DNA of 62,349 nt, filler included, from Sluysia triapertura (taxonomy: Eukaryota), in assembly GCA_046118255.1 (NCBI GenBank). It is 5 parts of 5 records of this genome, joined end to end, with 100 filler letters (N's around TTAATTAATTAA, not from the genome) between each part and the next. Parts side by side here need not be neighbours in the genome. Positions count along the whole stretch, not along the records: positions 14,663 to 26,465 come from JBJNIA010169257.1; 4 more parts are not named here. One strand, 5' to 3'. Each line of letters begins with the position of its first letter. The stretch's first letter is position 1. The notes beneath the pieces were generated by a model, which saw only the letters and a program-made list of their open reading frames with translations, made no database searches and was not told where the DNA came from. Positions 12,171 to 58,028 of this stretch are shown piece by piece. Position numbers and translations under genes: made by a program.

Positions 12171-12308
12171 AGGTGCCACTTGGTATGGTTGACTATTCTA
12201 ATCTAAAAATTGTTAGACAGGGCTGATAGCTCAGTGGTAGAGCATCGAACTACGCAACGAGAGGTCCCGAGTTCGATCCCCGGTCGGTCCATTTTATGAA
12301 GTCTGACA
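12171..12308 (+). mobile_element. tRNA-Ala-derived element with inverted termini, copy 1
   Basis: TGTTAGAC(12211)..GTCTGACA(12308) encloses GGGCTGATAGCTCAGTGGTAGAGC..GTTCGATCCCCGGTCGGTCCA-TTTT; shares the upstream arm GTGCCA..TTGACTAT with the other copies. Confidence 0.85.
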
Positions 12309-14662: not shown

Positions 14663-15540
14663 GCCATGACAAACTAACATGGAAGGAAATTAAATAATAA
14701 ATGAATTAATATATAATGAAAATAATTATTGTGATATTAGAGAACACATGATTTATAATTTTTAAATTTCAATTAAATTAATTGAATAAAATAACCGATT
14801 ACAAAATCGAATTTACTTTTATTTATACATTGAATTAATTTAGAGTTTTACATTTCAATAATCAATTGTAGAACTATGAAAAATATTCGTGAAGTACATA
14901 GTGTCGAGTCGAATGTCTTCTGTGTTTATCAAACATCTTCTCATCTATCTGATTTATGGAAAATATTTATGAAAATACTTAATAAAAAATAAATCAATAT
15001 TAACATGTTTAATCATGAAAACTATATAATTATAATCTTTGAAAACAAAGCAAGTTTAACAATGCATTGTAATTATGATTATAAGAAATGAATACATTCA
15101 AAATAATAAGAATTGCGCGTGTTAAAGAAGCTGCCATGTTTAATAAAGTTATAACATTTACAAGTACTCATTTTTATTTATTATCGTTTTTATAAAAGTA
15201 AATACATTGATAGTATTATTGTGGTGAGATTCTGCTGTGAGTTTGAAACAAATCGCATTACTTAGTATCATTTATTGTTAATTTAGTTTATGGACAATAA
15301 GTTTGACATTTTATGTGCATATTATTTAGATGATGTATGAGATGTAATAATGATTAGTTAAATATATGTGCAGATATGCGAGTAATGATTATAATCCGCC
15401 GAATAAGCATGTTATTTAAAAATTATGGCGATTATTACGATGACGATAATTGTGACTATATTGCTGATATTTATATTTCAACGTAAATTATTATTAATTT
15501 ATGCTTAAAAATCAATAATTATGAAGTTGATATTTTAATT

Positions 15541-16110
15541 ATGAGAGCAGTACAAATTTTAGTTTTGATTGTCGTAATAACGACTTGTATAGTAGTGATT
15601 TATTTTTGTTATTCACTTAAATGGCCGAATTCTAATAAATTTCAATTGATCAAAAAAGTAAAATTACTAAATGACAATCAATCATTTACTAAATCATGTT
15701 ATCAAAATTTGTTACTAAGACATGACATTTTGTCGAATTATGTGAAGTATAATATAAGTACTACGAAACAAAAATTACGAATTTGGCTAGATATGGTATC
15801 ATGTTGGCAAGCTATCTTAATCATCATCACAAATAAACCCGTTTATTCTCTTGCTTTATTTAACCAATTAATAACATTGTTATTTTCCAAGATTTGTTTA
15901 GCAATTATACCCATGATAGACAATTATAAAAATAATACGTTTTTTCATTTTCCGTTGTGTTTGCAATAGTTATTCAAACTGTTATATATTTTTTTGTTAT
16001 ATCTTATCGTTTTATAAATAAAATATCAAATATTGTCGTTTATTTAAATTCCTTACTTTTTAAAGGCATTAGGCCTAATCCGTTGATAAAAATTTTTTTG
16101 GTATTAATTA
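15541..16110 (+). pseudogene. Disrupted multi-pass membrane protein of a repeated lineage-specific family
   Basis: Two overlapping hydrophobic ORFs; segments QKLRIWLDM and KGIRP have counterparts at 5.7-6.2 kb (+) and 13.9-14.4 kb (-). Confidence 0.35.
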
Positions 16111-16195
16111 AATTGTTAAACTATTTTAATAAAAAATTTAAAATAAACAAAAATATTAATAGTTTATTTGAATTAAATTACTTAATGCCCTCCAT

Positions 16196-16330
16196 AGTGC
16201 CATTTGGTAAAATTGACTATAATAAAATAAATTTGTTAGACGGAGCTGATAACTCAGTGATAAAGCATCGACTGCGCAGACAGAGGTCTCGGGTTCGATC
16301 CCCGGTCAGTCCATTTTATGAAGTCTAACA
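16196..16330 (+). mobile_element. tRNA-Ala-derived element with inverted termini, copy 2
   Basis: TGTTAGAC(16234)..GTCTAACA(16330); A box mutated, B box GGTTCGATCC present; upstream arm GTGCCATTTGGTAAAATTGACTAT. Confidence 0.85.
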
Positions 16331-16885
16331 GATATATTTAAATAATTACTTCATACTGTTTAAATTTGTTTTAATGTTTTATATCTAACAGTTTGACAAT
16401 ACCAACAAAATTAGTTTCTAGGTTCCAATATTAAATTTCGTAACAGCTTTCTAAATGATTTCCAACATGAAAATTGAACTTCGGTACGATATTTAAATTT
16501 GCTGATGCACTTATGAATTTCCGAAAATTAAATTAGAAAAAGTAGATAAGGTTTAAAATGTGTTGAGCTAAAATATCTTAAACATTAAAAACAAAATTCT
16601 TAAAATATCCCTTATGTATTTGTTTGTATTATAAATTTGTAAGTACTTGTAAAATATTGTTTAAATATTTAATTATTTTATAAATTTATTTAAATTTAAT
16701 TTGTCATTAAATAATATTTACACATGAAAAATATTTTCCACAATAATATATTTTAATTTCTATTGCAATTATAATTATTATTTTTAACAATGAATATTTA
16801 AAATAATAATTGTAGAATCAAGATTGAGAAATTGTGATTTAAATTGTGCAAATATATATTTTGAATATTTGTCTTGATAAAATTT

Positions 16886-17721
16886 ATGATTAGGAAGAAG
16901 TTTTGGAGTTGTGTTTTGTTTGGTGCATGTTCTTTAGTATACTTTGATGTACATAAAAAATTTTACTTTACTTGTTTAGCAGAAATTTATGACCCCTTTA
17001 AAATATCTAAACCGTGGAATTATGATTGGGATTTAAATAGAGATTCTGTTGATTATGCAAATAGTAAAGCAAATAGGCACATAATATTAATTAGACACGG
17101 TCAATATAATATGAATCAGGATGATAAGTTGTGTACCTTAACAAAATTAGGCAGGTCACAAGCTGAATATACTGGAAAGCGGTTAAATGAGTTGAACATC
17201 AGTTTGCTTTTAATTTTTTGATAACACTTGATGAAGATTTCAGCTTAATTCATTCATCCATGACAAGAGCTCGTGAAACGGCTGAGTGTATTTTAAAGGA
17301 GTTATCTGTTCAACCGAAATCAGTTAATTGTGATCCAGAATTAATAGAAGGATGTCCTTATAAACCAGAACCACCTCCTATTAATTTTCAGATAGATGAT
17401 CAGGTGGCAAAAGCTGACAATATGCGTTTGACGAAAGCTTTTCAAAAATATTTTTATCGAGCTCCAAATTCACAAAAAGAAGATAGTTACGAAGTCCTAG
17501 TTTGTCACGCTAACGTTATTAGGTACTTCTTGTGTTGTTGTTTACAGTTTCCACGAGAAGGATGGATAAGGTATTAAGTTATATTGTTTGATAATGATAA
17601 TAGATTTACTTTGGATCACGGAAGTATTACGTGGGTTACTATTCGACCTAATGGTTGTATTAGTATAAAAGGTATTGGGAATTCTGGCTTTATGCCTGCA
17701 GATAAAATATCTTTTATATGA
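16886..17721 (+). CDS. PGAM5: Mitochondrial serine/threonine protein phosphatase PGAM5 (histidine phosphatase superfamily); exons 16886-17201, 17237-17570, 17604-17721
   Basis: N-terminal hydrophobic segment, WNYDWD (WDXNWD-like) motif, catalytic LIRHGQY, SSMTRARETA, LVCHANVIRYF, then LDHGSITWVTIRPNG..GNSGFMP. Removing two GT-AG introns (17202-17236, 35 nt; 17571-17603, 33 nt) gives one open frame ending in TGA. Confidence 0.95.
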
Positions 17722-19183
17722 TTTATAATTAAGTTTCAAACTTCATACAAGTGTACCAAATTCTAATATAAATATTAATAAATATTATTTAGCATTTTCT
17801 TTCAGCAATATTTTATTTAATGGTTATTGTATGTTATTAATATTAGTGATGAAATTTATACTTAAATGTAATTTTAGTTCTATTATTCCTCAGTTTAAGT
17901 TTATTTTAATTGTCAATTTTTAGCACTACCTTCGCATCCTTTTATATAATGTTGAACTAAGCAGAAAGACTTCTTTATCCGGTATGACTTCAGTAATTAT
18001 TAACTTTCGATAAATATTAATTGTCTTCAAATGGTATTCGAGCCTATTCGCAGTACTCTGATGACTACTTTAAATTCTATCTATTATCTCAAAATCTTAT
18101 ACTAGAAACGGAGCGGTATTTTATGATGTACTAAATATGACTTATGCTAATATAGTTACAAGCTTAAGCTCTACAGTTAATTATTTGTGTGCAACTTCAA
18201 GACTTAGGTTTATTAAAATCTTTCCTTCGCATATGTTTTCTGTCTTAATAGTATATTAAATTTTTTAAACTTTCATCACTAATTATCTTCAGAAATTAAG
18301 AATTATTTTATTAATTAATTATATTGAAGTAAATCAAATTAAAATAACTAATAATAAAAAGGGCGGCACACAGATAGTGTTGTCGAAGCTTTATAATAAA
18401 ATTTAACTCTCAACTTTGATATACAATTAAAGTTTATAAAAAGGAGTCTAAAAAATGAGTACTTGAGAGATGCAGGAAGAATTAATACAAAATTATGGGT
18501 AAAAAATGATAAAATGTTGTTGGTGAAGGTGAAAGTATCTTATTGAATATGAGATTGTTATAAAAAGTATATCTATAAATGAACTTCAAATGTTTGTAGA
18601 ATGAGAATGAGAACCTTAAACATTATCCATTAGAATATTGGGTATGAAAAACTGAACGTGAATTGAATTTTAAAAATTAAAGCGATGGATAGCTGCTTAG
18701 ATACCAGCGAAAGAAAATCCAACTTGCATTTTAACTTATTGAGTGTAATGGAATAATTATGAAATAAGACGAACAGAATTCTCAGAGCAGAAATAGACGT
18801 TTTTAATAGCTGCATAATACTGAATAAAACAAAACGAAATAAGGTAATAAAGATAAAGAATATTTCGTAAGTTTTTCGCATTTGTAACTATGGCGACAGT
18901 TTAGGAAAATATTTTTATTTATAAATTATCCCATATTATTTATAAATTATTTATCAAACGAACAATAAAAGAATCAGGCACGTTACATATTATACTTAAT
19001 ATTAAGGGTGGTTGATCATCAGAATTCTTTAAATTTATCGCCCATAAAAAATGTACTTCTATAACGGATAAGATCATATTAGCAGCTTCGACATTTAGAA
19101 ATTCTATTCAACTTAAAATTAACTTACGCTTTACTGTGTGTATGTTTAGGTTCTATTTATTTAAATATATTTTAGTTAATTTT

Positions 19184-19521
19184 CACAACCCTTTTTAAGG
19201 TGATGTTAAACAAAAATATCACTTTATATTTACGCAACCCTTCTTAAGGTGTTGCTTTAAAAATAAATCAGTTTTAAATTTTAAATCAAAAATTACGCAA
19301 CAGTTAAGGTGTTGCTTCAAAAACAAATCAGTTTAATAAATTTGTTAAAACTAAAAACAGATTAACCCTCTTAAGGTGTATTATTTAAACTAAAAAGAAA
19401 AAAACCTTATAAAGTTTAATAAAAGTATAATAATGATAATGATTTTTATTCACGAACTCAACCTCAGTTGACAGTAATTTGATTTTAATAGTAAATTTCA
19501 CAACCCTTATTAAGATGTTGC
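19184..19521. repeat. Array of imperfect palindromes GCAAC-N12-GTTGC with a (C)TTAAG core
   Basis: Copies at ~19184, 19234-19255 (GCAACCCTTCTTAAGGTGTTGC), 19297, 19364 and 19500, plus TCAAC-N4-GTTGA at 19458. Confidence 0.85.
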
Positions 19522-20049
19522 ATAAAAAGAAAAATTAATTTTAGTATTCCCTAGCGGTGAATACGACACTCTATAACAAAAAATTACTTGGTATTCATGG
19601 ACAATAAATGGTTCATCAAAAAATTTTATTGAATCTTCAAAAAATCTTTACAAAGTGAATTCTATTTTCCTAGAAAAACATTTGTGTGTGTGAAAATTAA
19701 ATTATTCTTACCTTTTTAAATTGCTGTTCGCCATTTTTGTCCATTTAATTTTTTGATAAATTAAAACAAAATAATAAATTAAAACAAATTAAAATATTTT
19801 ATCAATTTATTTAATACTTTTTACAAATTAAACTATTAATTTATTAAAATTTTATTTCAAGTATTTATAATAATTATTTCAAAATATAAATTGAATATTA
19901 AAATATTTTTTAATAAATATTTATTTTAATATTTACAAACCTAACAAATATTAATTGTAATAAAAATAATATTTATATAATAATATTCATACAAAATATA
20001 AAAATAACACTATTTACACAAAATATAAATATAGACAAAATATATAATT

Positions 20050-21530
20050 AAAATTGAAACTTGGCAAATACTTTCCCTTTCAGGAAGATTCGTCCTCCAA
20101 TAAGATAAATGTCTAAAAAATTATTATAAACAACAAGCACATTATTATGATAATCAATTTAATGTCGGTTTAGTCTAAGTCTACAGAGTCGCTATCTTCG
20201 TCGAGGAGTTAGTCGAAACGGAAAAGTCATTGAGTGCCTTCATTGGCGTGAAATTTTCGAGAAAGCGGAGTAGAATGATGAATGTGTATATCAGTTTTTT
20301 GTTTCCGGATATTGATTGATTTTGGTGAGTGAGGTACGTGTGTTAATAATGTTGTAAACGAGGTTATACTTGCTGTTGTTGGCTGACTCGGTGGTGCGGC
20401 ACTCGTTGATGTTCAATGATTGTTCATAAGAGATGTCGTCTTTAATTTGTGGAGTGATGATCTCGAATCGGAAGATATTATAACAGAAGAAGTAGGAGAA
20501 GAAATAAGTTTTAACTTTTTTGAAGGAGGAGAGACAAGTGTGGATGAGTGTTAGAGTTAGAGGAACTTGATTTAAAAAGAGTAGGAGGGGCCTTGTTGCA
20601 ACGGGTAATAAATTGTATATCCTGTTCCCTAATGTAATCAAGCAGGGTCACCAATTCTGTGACCATCTGCCATCAAGTCAACACTGGCCAAATGGGAAAG
20701 GTTAGCCGCAGTGTTTGACACGTCCTGACAAAGATATTGTCGGTCGAAAAGGAATTAAATTATGGTTAGACAAGTTTATAATTCCCTTCATTAATCCAAA
20801 GGTAATATCCATATCCTCGATTATAAACTGGGGATTCTTGTTACGCAGAATCCCCAGGATTTGAGGGCGGACATCGTCGATGTCCTCAGCCTGTCTGAGA
20901 TCGACGTCCGTAACTACTGGTATATTGCGACGAAAATTTTGGATTCGACATCGTGGCTTAATACGGGCTTCGGTGTTTATTATAGGGGGTACAAGTGATA
21001 CAGATAATCTGCAGCCTGTTCAAACAATCTGTTTCATATTGAAATGCCACATATGCAGAGAGGGTTGGTACGTGAGTATAAGAGGAACCACTCTTCCAAC
21101 GGCTCATGTTAGCAACGTCATCAACAAAAGGGAGGAAAGAAAGGAATATAAGTGAGGTAGTGCAATGCTCCTGCTGTTACCTCAGAAAGATGTAGAGTTG
21201 ATAATTCCTCCAAACGCAACAACAATCGCTAAGGTCACTTTAATCGCTCCCGCACAGAGACTATATAGAGGGTATCAAAAGAGTTGGGAATGTTAAGAAG
21301 ATCACGTAGGGAAATAAAAGAGGAATCAGATGCCAAATTGTCTGTAAGCTCAGACTTAAGCTTACAATAAGTAATAAAAGAATTAGGAAAGAAGGTAGAA
21401 GTAGCATTAGTAGAACAAAAACTCTCTATTGCTGTATAAAAGGTTCTCACTTGATTAATTACTTTGGCCTGGGGTCGGTAATTGTGTTGTGATTGATGTT
21501 TTGATTTTTGTAAATTTGAACTGAAGTAAA
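20050..21530 (-). pseudogene. Decayed Gag-like gene: helical N-terminal region, RG-rich linker, zinc-knuckle remnants, S/P/T-rich tail
   Basis: Fragments RTFYTAIESF, VRERLK*P*RLLLRLEELS, KHCG..SHLAS, GHRIGDPA, PPSKKLKL and LLDEDSDSVDLD; GC content visibly above the flanks; no protease or RT follows. Confidence 0.4.
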
Positions 21531-21699
21531 ATGAATTGCAATAAATGACTAAGACAAAATAAAACAGTGTAACTATACAAGTTATTGTTATTATTTTAGT
21601 CTTTGTTTATTTAATCAATTTCATTTTAATAAACAATAATATTTAAAAAGAATTAATATTGCTTTAAAAATGGGTTATTGCATAGTCGTGTATTCTTCC

Positions 21700-22190
21700 T
21701 ATAAAATTTTTTAAGCTGGCGTATTCGGTAATTAGGCCTTTGCGATTTTTATTATTCCTGTCGGATAACCAGGCATTGGCACCTGAAATCCGTTATATAG
21801 GACATTAACGCCAAGGAAAGTTGGAGGCTGATAAATATCAACACTCTTATTCTCCTAAAGCCCATGATAGGCTACAACAAGAGTTAAGTTTGGTCTGATA
21901 TACTTTATGGTGAATTCGTAGGATCTACGAAAATATTTATTGTAATAAATGTCACATTCTGTAATTGTAACTCGACATAAAGGACAAGGAGGTAAAAGAG
22001 TTAAAGCGGAGTTAAATAAAAAATACAGACATCGAAAGTGGAAAGGTGTCTGCAAGGTATTGCGATGGCGTAATATTTGTGGATTGGTCTGCGGCATATT
22101 GAGCAAAGTGTAAATCGTAAAAAAGTGTCGTTTTGCTAAAAATAAAAATTATATGATAAGATAATACCTACATAAGAACGATCAATTAAT
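21700..22190 (-). pseudogene. RING-H2 finger gene with one frameshift
   Basis: CSICRRPIHKYYAIAIPCRH/FHFRCLYFLFNSALTLLPPCPLCRVTI (21975-22105) has C3H2C3 spacing; preceded by a ~35-nt GT-AG intron. Confidence 0.75.
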
Positions 22191-22299
22191 AAAATTAATT
22201 TAAATAGAACACTTAATATAGTAGTATAAGTTTATTCTAATTAATAAAATATGCATACACTAATTAAGAACTTACTCTAACTAAATGATTGACGCTATG

Positions 22300-23390
22300 A
22301 AGTATGTGATTTTAATAAAATATGAGCTTCAACACCATCCTACTCACAACCGAAAATGGACAGGTAACAGCCGTCACACATGGTTAGTGAACAGGAAAAT
22401 GCTATTACTCATATTTTATATCTTATATAATTTATACCTTAATGAAAAAATGATTCTTATAAATTAATAAAACTTATGAATTTGAAATATAACAAGTATA
22501 ACTGAAGTAACTAAGCGGAAACTTAATAAAATGTGATAACTAAATATAGAATGAAGTAGTATATATATAGTATAAATATAGTATGAACTTAAACGTGAGT
22601 AATTATAAGATTGTAGACTTATATTCTTATTTGGAATAGTAACATAATTGGTAGTTATAGCATTTTTTTAATATTTAATATACTTAAGGTGGTAGTGATT
22701 GTAGCTAGTGCTGGATAATTGATAATGTCTAAGTTGTCCAAAATTGCACACTTTATACTCCTGCCAAAATATAAGAGTATTGTGAATCTCATTGTAACGT
22801 AAGATCCAAATTTCAATAAATGTGAGATTATATTCTGGCATACAACAGATGAATACCGGTGTTGGGAAGTATTAGCGCATAATGTTGCTCTTTGCCAGAT
22901 AGTTCATCGAAGTTTTTTCTAGAAAGATTCTTTTTCTCTGATTCGTAACTAATTAATATGTTATGTTTCATTAAGGGATTTGATATATGAACAAATTTAA
23001 TAGTTGTCGAAAGTTTATTAAAAGTATATGGTTTTGTTCTAATTCTGTAGGTATGTATGGATTTAGTTTTTAAATCCCAATTTGTCATAAATTCTAAATA
23101 TAGAGTGACGTTAAATGATTGATTTTCCAAAAGACCGTCGCAAGAGACAATCCAGTATCTGGTGTATTTATTTATATCTGACTCAAAATTGCACTACTTA
23201 GTTAAACAACAATTCATTGTGATATTAGTAATCAAAGCAGTATTTCTTTGTGTTTTCCGTATATAGTGCGTTTTTTATAGTGCCTTTAATGTAATTCGTG
23301 GTTTTACTATTATCGGTTGTGTATGTACGTTAATTATACAAGTCATACATATACATGCCGACTTGACAGACTGTAAGCTAGTCATTTTCC
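22300..23390 (-). pseudogene. Decayed predicted surface glycoprotein-like gene
   Basis: ORF 22828-23130 extended upstream reads ..NITMNCC..RYWIVSCDGLLENQSFNVTLY..YRIRTKP, with several N-x-S/T sequons and an FN3-like beta pattern; inference only. Confidence 0.3.
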
Positions 23391-23620
23391 ATCCTCCATA
23401 TACTAAAGGTGAATGATTATTCGTTGCATATTCATAGACAGTCGGTGGTCTTACTGGGAATCCTGGTGGCGGTTCATAATTGTTTCTATGTGGAATGGTG
23501 TACTAATCGTCATCGTCGTTGTGATTGTATGGTAAACAGGGTTATCTACATCTGTTTGATACGAACATAATAATTGCGAGTATAACAATTGACAATGCAA
23601 TTGTTGTGGTAAAAGGCCTA

Positions 23621-23796
23621 AAAGTGCCAAGTAGTATAATTGAATATATTGAAAATGAAATAGTTAGACGGGGCTGATAGCTCAGTGGTAGAGCATTCGC
23701 ACTGCGCATCGAAGGTTCCGGGTTCGATCCTCGGTCAGTCCATTTTACGAAGTCTAACAATAGTCAATTGTACTATCATTATTCTAAATGGCTCTT
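23621..23796 (+). mobile_element. tRNA-Ala-derived element with inverted termini, copy 3 (both outer arms present)
   Basis: tRNA-like core at 23671-23742 with intact acceptor, D and T stems followed by TTTT; inner IR GTTAGAC/GTCTAAC; right arm ATAGTCAATTGTACTATCATTATTCTAAATGGC is the reverse complement of the family left arm. Confidence 0.88.
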
Positions 23797-24329
23797 AATA
23801 ATTATACGATTTATTAATGATTGTGATACTAGTATCTTATATTAATAAAACGTTATAAAAAATTTTAAGTATATATAGTAACCGTTAATTTACTTAAGAG
23901 AAAAAACTTATTAAGATATGACTTACAATTACAAGATGTGATTCAGACGATTACTACGTGCACTTTACATAAACAACAATCAGCTACATGGAAAAAATCA
24001 CAAAAATACATTACAATGTATCTCATTTACATCATCACATAACATTACAGTATTCACCACACTTTCAGCATTACATTTCAATTATAGCTACAAGATCATA
24101 AACTATAAACTTATAATTATCTCCAAGTCATCCCATCATCACTATAGCACTAAACCTTTCTCATATGTTGTATTTTATATTTTTATATATTTTATCGAGA
24201 AATTTATAAAAAATGGTCAAAACATTGACCTTATTACTAAAATTAGTTCTTCACAAATTTTTAAAATGAATAATTGGGAATTTTTGAAATGAACGAATAA
24301 GAATTTTAAAAATCGAAAAACAAAAAGGT

Positions 24330-25090
24330 TGACCAACATGACCTACAATTATGTTTTGAATAAAATTGCGATGCTGTATCGATATATCGGTTTGGACATT
24401 TCAGGTGGTGCGTTTGTTGCTTGGATTCGGTCGCCTGCTTGTTTGGATCTAGATGCGATGATGAACCTACAGTTAAAAGTCTGGATTGTATATCAACGTA
24501 TTAGTTTGGCTCAGGATGTGATGCACTACGAATCGTTCGAACCGATTTCAAATTTCAAAATGCTGAGTTTCATTTCAAGTCCGTTACACAAGTGGCATTT
24601 CAAAATCAGAATAATACACCGATATATCGTTTTGGATATGACAGACGATGTATATCTTATCGAGATTATTAGCTTAGATGTTTAAAATGCTGTAAAACGT
24701 ATAATTTTTGTTCACAAAAGATCTCCTACTGGTTCAGACCCAGATACGGTGATAAATTGACTGTTTAGAATTGAGATTATTAGTTTAGATATTGATAATG
24801 TTATAAAACTTATAATTTTTGTTTACACAGGTCACCTACCAGTGCAGATACAGAAGCTGTGACGAACCTACTTTTCGAAATTGAAAATATGTTATATAAA
24901 TTTATTAGGAAATATTGTTTTTCTTTTTACTATGACGAATATTTTAAATATCGTAAAACTTGTTAACAATGATTATTTGTCTTCTTTTAAAATCACTCCA
25001 TATATTGTGTACGAGAGAACGCAAGAATCTTCACATTCACGCACCAATACTTAAATTGTAAAAGGCAGACCACACCGACGCATAAATTAA
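24330..25090 (+). pseudogene. Disrupted gene of unknown function with internal duplications
   Basis: ORF 24329-24685 continues through stops; ~112-bp tandem duplication near 24660-24885 (IEIISLDV../IEIISLDI..) and repeated RYIxLD segments. Confidence 0.45.
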
Positions 25091-25429
25091 GATATAATAA
25101 TTTTATTTTAATAATGGCATGGTCTGCTATCTCAACCATAGAGATTATAATACTCCGATCCATTGTTCAAAGATACAGCCGTATGCATAATTTTCGCATA
25201 AGTTTTAGTACCTTTCATGATTTTAAATTTCGTTTCTTAATGATTAGTGAATTTTTACATTAGATAAAACTCATTGCTTTCTATGAAAGAATGAACTGTT
25301 TCATCGTGATAGCGCCATTGGAGTGGAGGTTGTCGATTTTAGAACTCCAAAACAAAATTTGTTTTATGGTCCTGGCGGTCACATATACATTACGAAGAAT
25401 CTTGGTCCAGGCTTCAAATCTCCATCACG

Positions 25430-25741
25430 TAATATGTTATTATTTTGTTTTCTTCAAAATTGACATGTGAACAATGTTATTTTATGCTTTTGTTTTGTGT
25501 TTGTGATAAATAAAGTCTTCATTATTTGTGTAATTATGATTTCAATACTGATAATAATAATAATAATATTAATAATAATAATAATAAATGTTCTGTGTGC
25601 ACTAAGCAGTCAATTAATACCTTTATAAACGTGTATGATAATCTGAATTTTAATGAATTTCATAAAATACATAGAGTTAAAAATAAAATACCATTCAGAA
25701 TATTATTGCATCAAATTAAATTTAATATCCTGTCATTTTAA
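25430..25741 (+). pseudogene. Decayed RING-variant/PHD-like finger gene with an Asn (AAT) expansion
   Basis: With frameshifts reads ICYY..VILCFC..CDK*SLHYLC..(N)n..KCSVC, i.e. C4HC3-like ligand order. Confidence 0.35.
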
Positions 25742-25778
<37 letters not shown>

Positions 25779-26465
25779 TATAATATAATGAAAAATTTAT
25801 GTGTTATGTTATTTAATATGAAAACAGCTTTCTGTATTTGTCTGAATTAAACTTTAAATTTAATACCTTACTTCCAAAATATTCGTAACTTTAATCGAAA
25901 TAATAATCGGTGCTTAATATCTGTCGCCATTCTATCCAAAAACACGTTTTAAAGTCTATTTCTTGTGTAGATAACATTTGTAAACAATTTTAGACAAATA
26001 TATTTGTAAGCTAGTTCTATTTGTAAATTAGTTCTATAATTTTGTAAATATAAATATTATTAATTTTTGAAAACATAAATTTTATTGTAATTTTTAATAA
26101 TTGTAGAATAATTACAAATATTAGTTCTAACAATTATGTAAATCAAAATAATCGCAATTAATCACTAATAGTTAATATTATTTATGTAAATTATGATTAT
26201 TAATTAGTGATAATTAACGTTTGGTAATTTTAATATAAAAACGTAAAAAACGTATAAAATTAAAAAATAATTTTAATTACAAACAGGAGTAATATTAAGT
26301 AAGCTAATATAAACATATGCATTGATAGGTTTTGCATCAAAATCCTACTTAAACTCACATTTATTAACAAATAGATTAATTAATTAAAATCTTAATTAAC
26401 TTAATTAAGAAAAATTACGTTTTTGTGAATAACTTTTGAATTCGGAATGCTATGTTAAATTCAAG

Positions 26466-57873: not shown

Positions 57874-58028
57874 TGTTAGACTTAATTAAATGGACTTACC
57901 GGGATTCTAACCCCGACCCTCTTACCTCACATTGTGCAGTCTTGATCACTGAGCTATCATAGCGGTCTAACAATTTTATTTTTTTATTATAGTCAATTTT
58001 ATACTATCATTATTCTAAATGGCACTTT
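57874..58028 (-). mobile_element. tRNA-Ala-derived element with inverted termini, copy 4 (diverged)
   Basis: TGTTAGAC(57874)..GTCTAACA(57972); reverse strand reads TGATAGCTCAGTG..CCCGGTAAGTCCATTT; full-length arm ATAGTCAATTTTATACTATCATTATTCTAAATGGCAC ends near 58025. Confidence 0.8.

What the first reader, a model, noticed from the sequence alone, without database searches (positions are those of the whole stretch)
23621..23796. tRNA-cored mobile element with nested inverted repeats (neither an ordinary SINE nor an ordinary MITE)
Seen: four copies on three contigs (12171-12308, 16196-16330, 23621-23796, 57874-58028). Each has a ~72-nt tRNA-like core (A box, B box, T-run right after the discriminator base) inside an 8-bp inverted repeat TGTTAGAC..GTCTAACA, giving a ~97-bp TG..CA unit. 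All four share an outer arm GTGCCA..TTGACTAT on the tRNA 5' side. Copy 3 has the reverse complement of that arm on its 3' side, matching the full-length 5' arm of copy 4 over ~33 bp. There is no poly-A tail and no LINE-derived tail. Known: SINEs have a head-body-tail layout without TIRs; Cassandra TRIMs carry 5S rRNA inside LTRs. Inference: either a non-autonomous DNA transposon that captured a whole Pol III gene, or a minimal tRNA-derived LTR (a tRNA analogue of Cassandra) whose TG..CA ends are integrase substrates. Three copies lacking the right outer arm suggests the inner GTCTAACA end is itself a mobility boundary.
Basis: partly seen in the sequence, partly recalled or inferred. Interest (0 to 1): 0.8.

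Follow-up and report, generated by a model that had tools for sequence, protein, structure and literature searches.

The report
Repeated tRNA-like pseudogene with inverted arms
A short repeat built around a decayed tRNA-like gene occurs twice in this AT-rich animal-type contig, and one copy sits between inverted arms like a miniature DNA transposon, but two copies cannot show that it moves or how.

Summary
The repeat is real. Two copies lie in the piece: c2 at 16196-16330 and c3 at 23623-23795. They align over about 137 bp, from AGTGCCA, 47-48 nt upstream of a tRNA-like core, to GTCTAACA, 17 nt downstream of it, and similarity then stops (BLAST E 3e-31). The core has A and B boxes and a TTTT run right after the discriminator base, but neither copy is a sound tRNA. 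c3 scores 48 bits with an odd anticodon arm. c2 scores 22 bits, below the Rfam threshold. The core is no better conserved than its flanks.

Only c3 has a right arm. That arm is the reverse complement of the shared left arm and is the best non-self hit of a left-arm model anywhere in the piece. No target-site duplication, PBS/PPT, paired LTR or tail was found.

My best reading, at confidence 0.4, is decayed copies of a non-autonomous repeat spread as DNA (MITE-like) that carries a tRNA-derived Pol III unit. An ordinary SINE is unlikely. The "tRNA analogue of Cassandra" already exists (Helenus/TRIMp3, Kojima 2024), and its defining features are not met here. No further copies could be retrieved, so copy number, ends and mobility stay untested. 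Interest is moderate.

The parts
23623..23647 (+). c3 left outer arm (AGTGCCA...TTGAATAT), shared with c2
   Evidence: Aligns to c2 16196-16220. Pairs with 23760-23795 in the DNA fold.
23648..23661 (+). c3 AT-rich spacer between the outer arm and the inner repeat; absent from the right side
   Evidence: a 13-14 nt gap when the left arm is aligned to the reverse complement of the right arm.
23662..23669 (+). c3 inner inverted repeat, left half (AGTTAGAC; 7 of 8 bases complementary to the right half)
   Evidence: Direct reading; pairs in the RNA fold.
23671..23742 (+). c3 tRNA-like core. A box TAGCTCAGTGG, B box GGTTCGATCC, G3:T70 in the acceptor stem, 18-nt anticodon arm (one base too many).
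   Evidence: Rfam RF00005 48.4 bits, E 5e-8. ARAGORN 'tRNA-???', anticodon not assignable.
23743..23751 (+). c3 trailer TTTTACGAA. The T4 run is a Pol III terminator-like signal directly after the discriminator base.
   Evidence: Direct reading; 16/17 identical to c2 together with the inner repeat.
23752..23759 (+). c3 inner inverted repeat, right half (GTCTAACA); last position shared with c2
23760..23795 (-). c3 right outer arm. It is the reverse complement of the left arm (AGAGCCATTTAG + 11-nt insert + TACAATTGACTAT) and abuts the inner repeat directly.
   Evidence: Empirical p 0.01-0.03. Best non-self hit of the left-arm HMM in the piece, minus strand 23775-23757. Hairpin z = -2.4. Closer to c2's left arm than to c3's own.
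16196..16220 (+). c2 left outer arm (AGTGCCATTTGG...AATTGACTAT)
16234..16241 (+). c2 inner inverted repeat, left half (TGTTAGAC)
16243..16313 (+). c2 tRNA-like core, degenerate. Four G>A changes break the D stem and the A box, and there are indels in the anticodon arm.
   Evidence: Rfam tRNA 22.4 bits, below the gathering score of 29. Not called by ARAGORN. Fold no better than shuffles.
16314..16330 (+). c2 trailer TTTTATGAA plus the inner repeat right half GTCTAACA. Similarity to c3 ends here, and no right outer arm follows.
   Evidence: no arm.

Best explanation
c2 and c3 are two decayed copies of a short, non-coding interspersed repeat. Its unit is a tRNA-derived Pol III-type pseudogene (A box, B box, T4 terminator) together with about 48 nt of upstream and 17 nt of downstream sequence. 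The copied unit includes sequence that a Pol III transcript of the core would not contain, so the family most likely spread as DNA.

The fullest copy, c3 (173 bp), has the layout of a miniature inverted-repeat element: arms of about 25-36 nt plus a 7-8 nt inner repeat enclose the tRNA-like cargo. A transposase supplied in trans would bind these arms. c2 would then be a one-armed, immobile relic.

Shown: the repeat, its limits in these two copies, the tRNA-likeness, the non-functionality of the cores, and the inverted arm of c3.

Inferred: mobility, DNA-level transposition, the role of the arms, and Pol III transcription.
For: - c2 and c3 align over about 137 bp (E 3e-31; nhmmer 1e-44 and 1e-47), with sharp loss of similarity on both sides.
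- Flanks and core are equally conserved: 38/48 for the left arm, 61/75 for the core, 16/17 for the trailer. Selection is therefore not acting on a tRNA, and the whole unit decays together.
- The cores are defective. c3 has an 18-nt anticodon arm and no assignable anticodon. c2 scores below the Rfam threshold.
- T4 follows the discriminator base directly, and the shared leader is 47-48 nt long. Both argue against copying through a Pol III transcript.
- c3's right arm is the top inverted hit of the left-arm model in the whole piece and lies exactly at the element's edge. Its empirical p is 0.01-0.03 and the hairpin z is -2.4.
- That right arm resembles c2's left arm more than c3's own, so it is not a recent local inverted duplication.
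Against: - Only two copies could be examined.
- No target-site duplication rises above background.
Three independent truncations at the same base would be odd for a TIR element.
- The arm match has two indels and is only moderately significant.
- No transposase gene or autonomous partner is in the piece.
- No further copies were found in any searchable collection.
- A single 137-bp duplication plus one local inversion could give the same picture.
Confidence: 0.4

Rival explanations
1. These are dispersed tRNA pseudogenes made by ordinary small-scale duplication, not by transposition. One approximately 137-bp segment (a tRNA gene with its flanks) was duplicated within this locus and decayed, and c3's right arm is a local rearrangement.
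For: Only two copies, 7.4 kb apart and in the same orientation. No TSD. With two copies, the limits of similarity are simply the limits of one duplication event.
Against: c3's right arm resembles c2's left arm more than its own, which a local inversion of c3's arm would not give. About 17% divergence with shared sharp ends fits an older family.
Confidence: 0.2
2. These are solo LTRs of a Helenus-type TRIM (TRIMp3): a non-autonomous LTR retrotransposon whose LTR contains a tRNA-like Pol III promoter and which is mobilised by a Gypsy or Copia element.
For: Such elements exist in fungi, plants and six animal phyla. Their tRNA-like parts are usually non-functional, and solo LTRs are common (PMC10886601). 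c2's inner unit is TG..CA with a short terminal inverted repeat. A 137-bp unit read from TGCCA to TAACA would fall in the known LTR size range of 120-323 bp.
Against: Similarity passes 38 nt beyond the inner TG, and c3 has AG there. There is no 4-5 bp TSD at either candidate boundary (direct reading). No TGG primer-binding site follows either copy. There is no second unit within about 1.3 kb, and a host PGAM5 gene lies between the two copies. A T4 run straight after the tRNA-like part would stop a Pol III transcript inside the 5' LTR (inference).
Confidence: 0.12
3. This is an unusual tRNA-derived retroposon (SINE-like), copied through RNA that starts upstream of the tRNA-like part and reads through the weak T4 run.
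For: It has internal A and B boxes. Four Ts can be a weak terminator in some organisms (general knowledge). The ends are asymmetric in c2. An 8-mer AATTACTT flanks c2.
Against: Pol III starts close to the A box, not 48-57 nt upstream. There is no A-rich, simple-repeat or LINE-like tail. The flanking 8-mer is matched or beaten in 21% of random flank pairs. The left arm is not a second tRNA-derived monomer.
Confidence: 0.1
4. These are working tRNA genes of one family whose conserved flanks are regulatory.
For: c3 passes the Rfam tRNA threshold and has canonical A and B boxes, the G18 G19 and T-loop positions, and a terminator.
Against: c3's anticodon arm has an extra base and no assignable anticodon. 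c2 is below threshold with a broken D stem. The core is no better conserved than the flanks.
Confidence: 0.03

Closest known systems
MITEs (miniature inverted-repeat transposable elements; non-autonomous DNA transposons)
   Same: c3 is 173 bp, non-coding and AT-rich in its arms. It has inverted terminal arms of about 25-36 nt and folds as one hairpin.
   Different: The interior is an almost complete tRNA-like Pol III unit with its own terminator, which I do not know from described MITE families (own knowledge; the literature searches found no precedent). No TSD is visible, c2 lacks one arm, and no autonomous partner is known.
Helenus / TRIMp3 (Kojima 2024, PMC10886601) and Cassandra
   Same: A short non-autonomous element carries a non-functional small-RNA-gene-like sequence with Pol III boxes. 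It inflates tRNA pseudogene counts.
   Different: Helenus has two direct LTRs, a PBS, a PPT and 4-5 bp TSDs, and is 311-1263 bp long. None of these is seen here. This unit has a T4 run right after the tRNA-like part and, in c3, inverted rather than direct arms.
tRNA-derived SINEs (SINE2)
   Same: A tRNA-related sequence with A and B boxes, dispersed and decaying. The 23-nt T-arm/acceptor string even recurs in SINE heads from termite-gut metagenome contigs.
   Different: This unit has a shared 47-48 nt leader upstream of the tRNA-like start, a terminator directly after it, and no body or tail. The termite SINE bodies are unrelated.

Membership tests
tRNA-derived SINE | tRNA-related head with internal Pol III A and B boxes | tested here: met
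   Rfam tRNA 48.4 bits (c3) and 22.4 bits (c2). The A box is intact in c3 and the B box in both.
tRNA-derived SINE | The element begins at or near the tRNA-like 5' end (the Pol III start) | tested here: not met
   Similarity starts 47-48 nt upstream, at AGTGCCA.
tRNA-derived SINE | A body and a 3' tail (A-rich, simple-repeat or LINE-derived), with no terminator between head and tail | tested here: not met
   TTTT follows the discriminator base directly. Similarity ends 17 nt later. The downstream flanks are unrelated and there is no A run.
tRNA-derived SINE | Variable-length target-site duplications | tested here: inconclusive
   The best flanking direct repeat is an 8-mer at c2. It is equalled or beaten in 21% of random flank pairs, and nothing is seen at c3. 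Two old copies are too few.
MITE / non-autonomous TIR DNA transposon | Terminal inverted repeats | tested here: inconclusive
   c3: yes (p 0.01-0.03; top inverted hit; hairpin z -2.4). c2: no right arm.
MITE / non-autonomous TIR DNA transposon | Fixed-length target-site duplication typical of a superfamily (TA, TTAA, 3 bp, 8 bp and so on) | tested here: inconclusive
   None is recognisable at c3's outer ends (flanks ...CCTAAA | element | TAATAA...). An AT-rich context and a single two-armed copy prevent a call.
MITE / non-autonomous TIR DNA transposon | Small, non-coding, many dispersed copies with the same ends | tested here: inconclusive
   173 bp and non-coding: met. Only 2 copies are visible, sharing the left end and the inner right end. 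The genome-wide count is not available.
MITE / non-autonomous TIR DNA transposon | An autonomous partner with the same terminal repeats that encodes a transposase | not testable with these tools
   No transposase domain in the piece. The source genome is not in any searchable collection.
Helenus / TRIMp3 (PMC10886601) | A tRNA-like sequence with conserved boxes A and B inside the repeat unit | tested here: met
Helenus / TRIMp3 (PMC10886601) | Two direct LTRs enclosing a short internal region with a PBS and a PPT (whole element 311-1263 bp) | tested here: not met
   There is no second unit within about 1.3 kb of either copy. The copies are 7.4 kb apart around a host PGAM5 gene. No TGG-type PBS follows GTCTAACA. 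A solo-LTR state cannot be excluded.
Helenus / TRIMp3 (PMC10886601) | LTR ends TG...CA flanked by 4-6 bp TSDs | tested here: not met
   TG..CA holds only for c2's inner 97 bp, and similarity continues 38 nt beyond that TG. c3 has AG. The 4- and 5-bp flanks differ at both candidate boundaries.
Functional tRNA gene | A canonical cloverleaf with a 7-nt anticodon loop and an assignable anticodon, with the core under purifying selection | tested here: not met
   ARAGORN gives 'tRNA-???' for c3 and nothing for c2. c2 is below the Rfam threshold. Core identity (81%) is about equal to flank identity (79-94%).
Helitron (non-autonomous) | 5'-TC ... CTRR-3' ends, inserted between host A and T | tested here: not met
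   Direct reading. The unit starts AGTGCC and ends TAACA. The conserved CA after CTAA belongs to the unit, and no T follows.

The most novel reading that the evidence does not exclude
A family of TIR-bounded DNA transposons whose only cargo is a nearly whole tRNA-type Pol III transcription unit (boxes A and B plus terminator). It would amplify in an extremely AT-rich animal genome and scatter TFIIIC/Pol III binding sites. It would be a DNA-transposon counterpart to SINEs and to Helenus/TRIMp3, possibly with a second, asymmetric way of copying that ends at the inner GTCTAACA repeat.
Probability: 0.25. Interest if true: 0.6.

Novelty: new variant of a known kind. Interest (0 to 1): 0.4.

Why it matters
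If the family really moves as DNA with a tRNA-type Pol III unit as cargo, it adds a third route by which small-RNA genes become interspersed repeats, beside SINEs and TRIMp3. That would matter for tRNA gene prediction in AT-rich genomes, because such copies inflate pseudogene counts. It would also matter for how TFIIIC sites and possible insulators are spread. If it is only a duplicated pseudogene or a solo Helenus-type LTR, it is routine repeat annotation.

Tried and rejected
- More copies elsewhere. Exact-pattern scans of metagenome contigs, viral contigs and prokaryotic genome contigs found no copy. The 12 metagenome hits to the T-arm/acceptor 23-mer are mostly unrelated SINE heads, chiefly on contigs I take for termite-gut metagenomes, plus one prokaryote-type tRNA.
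- Source genome. An exact look-up of a window ORF in public assemblies found nothing.
- Sequence strings of the element in the paper library: none relevant.
- Target-site duplications. The AATTACTT pair at c2 and weaker pairs at c3 are not above background.
- A displaced right arm in c2 behind a second TCTAACAG: not significant, p about 0.16.
- Left arm as a decayed tRNA half (a dimeric element): no similarity above background.
- Helitron ends: absent by direct reading.
- The two copies as the LTRs of one retrotransposon: rejected, because the interval holds an intron-bearing host PGAM5 gene.
- Steps left out. I did not run the large profile search, because the neighbouring protein was already identified and the claim does not rest on absence of relatives. 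Exons were searched separately by reference, and only exon lengths and reading frame were computed.

Full report
**Setting**

The usable piece is 14663-26465. It is very AT-rich, about 25% G+C, with the tRNA-like cores standing out at 55-58%. It is eukaryotic. A PGAM5-type histidine phosphatase gene lies at 16886-17721 on the + strand, in three exons split by introns of 35 and 33 nt (Pfam His_Phos_1; PGAM5 hits; frames and junctions). The best word-search hits are only about 50% identical (a Strongylus vulgaris fragment and a fish fragment). The host is therefore an unidentified AT-rich animal-type genome, possibly a nematode or another small invertebrate. I do not take it for human. No other ORF matched a Pfam family convincingly.

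Yes, for the two copies I can see.
- c2 (16196-16330) and c3 (23623-23759) align end to end over about 137 bp. BLAST gives E 3e-31 and nhmmer gives E 1e-44 and 1e-47.
- Identity by segment is 38/48 in the left arm, 61/75 in the tRNA-like core and 16/17 in the trailer plus inner repeat. It falls to background immediately outside.
- Rfam calls c3's core a tRNA at 48.4 bits (threshold 29). It calls c2's core at 22.4 bits, which is below threshold.
- ARAGORN reports only c3 and cannot assign an anticodon.
- c3 has a canonical A box, D arm, T arm and B box, but its anticodon arm is one base too long.
- c2 carries four G>A changes that break the D stem and the A box, plus indels in the anticodon arm.
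- All seven substitutions in the core are transitions.
- In both copies TTTT follows the discriminator base directly.

- The inner repeat is 8 bp and TG..CA only in c2. c3 has AGTTAGAC.
- An inverted repeat of 7 bp or more in this geometry occurs at 4.3% of random positions in the piece, so it is weak evidence alone.
- TTGACTAT reads TTGAATAT in c3.

**The outer inverted arm**

To the right of GTCTAACA, c3 continues with 36 nt (23760-23795). Their reverse complement reads as the family's left arm with an 11-nt insertion and without the 13-14 nt spacer.

Ungapped scores alone were marginal against shuffles. Three further tests support the arm:
- Against all windows of the piece, the arm without the inner repeat ranks at p 0.01-0.03.
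- A left-arm HMM finds this spot, on the minus strand, as its best non-self hit in the entire piece.
- The 173-nt element folds into one long hairpin with z = -2.4.

The arm is closer to c2's left arm than to c3's own. It was therefore probably inherited from a two-armed source copy rather than made by a recent local inversion. c2 has no such arm.

**What it is not**

- A working tRNA gene family is unlikely. The cores are defective and no better conserved than the flanks.
- An ordinary SINE is unlikely. The shared unit begins 47-48 nt upstream of the tRNA-like start, a T4 run follows the core, and there is no body or tail. The left arm is not a second, decayed tRNA monomer.
- Helitron ends are absent by direct reading.
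- The two copies are not the LTRs of one element. The 7.4 kb between them holds the intron-bearing PGAM5 gene.

**The LTR idea and the literature**

Kojima (2024, PMC10886601) defined Helenus, a group of TRIMs whose LTRs carry a tRNA-like sequence with boxes A and B. Helenus is found in fungi, one plant and six animal phyla. It has a PBS, a PPT and 4-5 bp TSDs, is 311-1263 bp long, and is common as solo LTRs. Together with Cassandra and Ajax it is named TRIMp3.

The defining features are not met here:
- There are no paired units.
- There is no PBS.
- There is no TSD.
- Similarity runs through the supposed 5' TG end.
- A terminator-like T4 run sits directly after the promoter-bearing part.

A solo-LTR origin cannot be excluded from two old copies, so I keep it as a rival at about 0.12.

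**Best explanation**

The unit contains sequence that a Pol III transcript of the core would not include, and the whole unit decays evenly. It was therefore most likely copied as DNA. c3 has the anatomy of a MITE with a tRNA-derived Pol III unit as its interior. On this reading c2 is a one-armed relic.

I put this at 0.4, because the weaknesses are real:
- There are only two copies.
- No TSD is above background.
- There is no autonomous partner.
That fits a symmetric TIR element poorly and hints at an asymmetric copying process that I cannot name.
- A plain local duplication plus a rearrangement remains possible (0.2).

**Limits**

No further copy could be fetched, and no paper holds the element's sequence strings. 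Literature searches for MITEs with tRNA-like interiors found no precedent. That is absence in a keyword search, not proof of novelty.

**Verdict**

This is a real repeat of a tRNA-like pseudogene with co-copied flanks. The DNA-transposon reading is plausible but unproven. The LTR reading is unsupported here and no longer novel. Interest is moderate (0.4). The question is fully decidable with the source genome.

Noticed in passing
window 16886-17721 (+): A PGAM5-type mitochondrial Ser/Thr phosphatase gene. It has an N-terminal hydrophobic segment, a WNYDWD motif and an RHG catalytic motif, in three exons (16886-17201, 17237-17570, 17604-17721) with very short introns of 35 and 33 nt. c2 lies about 550 bp upstream in the same orientation.
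   Followed up: partly
window 19177-19533: Five spaced copies (49-139 nt apart) of a small hairpin-like motif, GCAACCCTTnTTAAGGTGTTGC (GCAAC/GTTGC arms), in an otherwise AT-rich intergenic stretch. Not explained.
   Followed up: no
window 20163-21162: An island of 39-43% G+C in a 25% G+C context. It has no Pfam-recognisable ORF on either strand and no Rfam match. It could be a decayed mobile-element fragment or a non-coding gene.
   Followed up: partly
window 16385-16392: A second TCTAACAG 8-mer lies 55 nt downstream of c2's GTCTAACAG end. The sequence after it resembles the inverted arm only at background level (p about 0.16).
   Followed up: yes
window 24380-24404 / 24620-24644 and 24659-24716 / 24770-24827: Local direct repeats (84% identity, spacings 240 and 111 nt) downstream of c3. 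Also (ATA)n/(AAT)n microsatellites at 25551-25587 and 25742-25789.
   Followed up: no
L001-L009, L011, L012 (metagenome contigs, most of which I take from memory to be termite-gut samples): The 23-nt string GGGTTCGATCCNCGGTCAGTCCA of the core recurs in the tRNA-related heads of SINE-like repeats with an unrelated body, in contigs of 38-54% G+C. L010 carries a prokaryote-type tRNA with the same acceptor stem (GGGCTGA/TCAGTCC, G3:T70). I take both for convergence on common tRNA features.
   Followed up: partly
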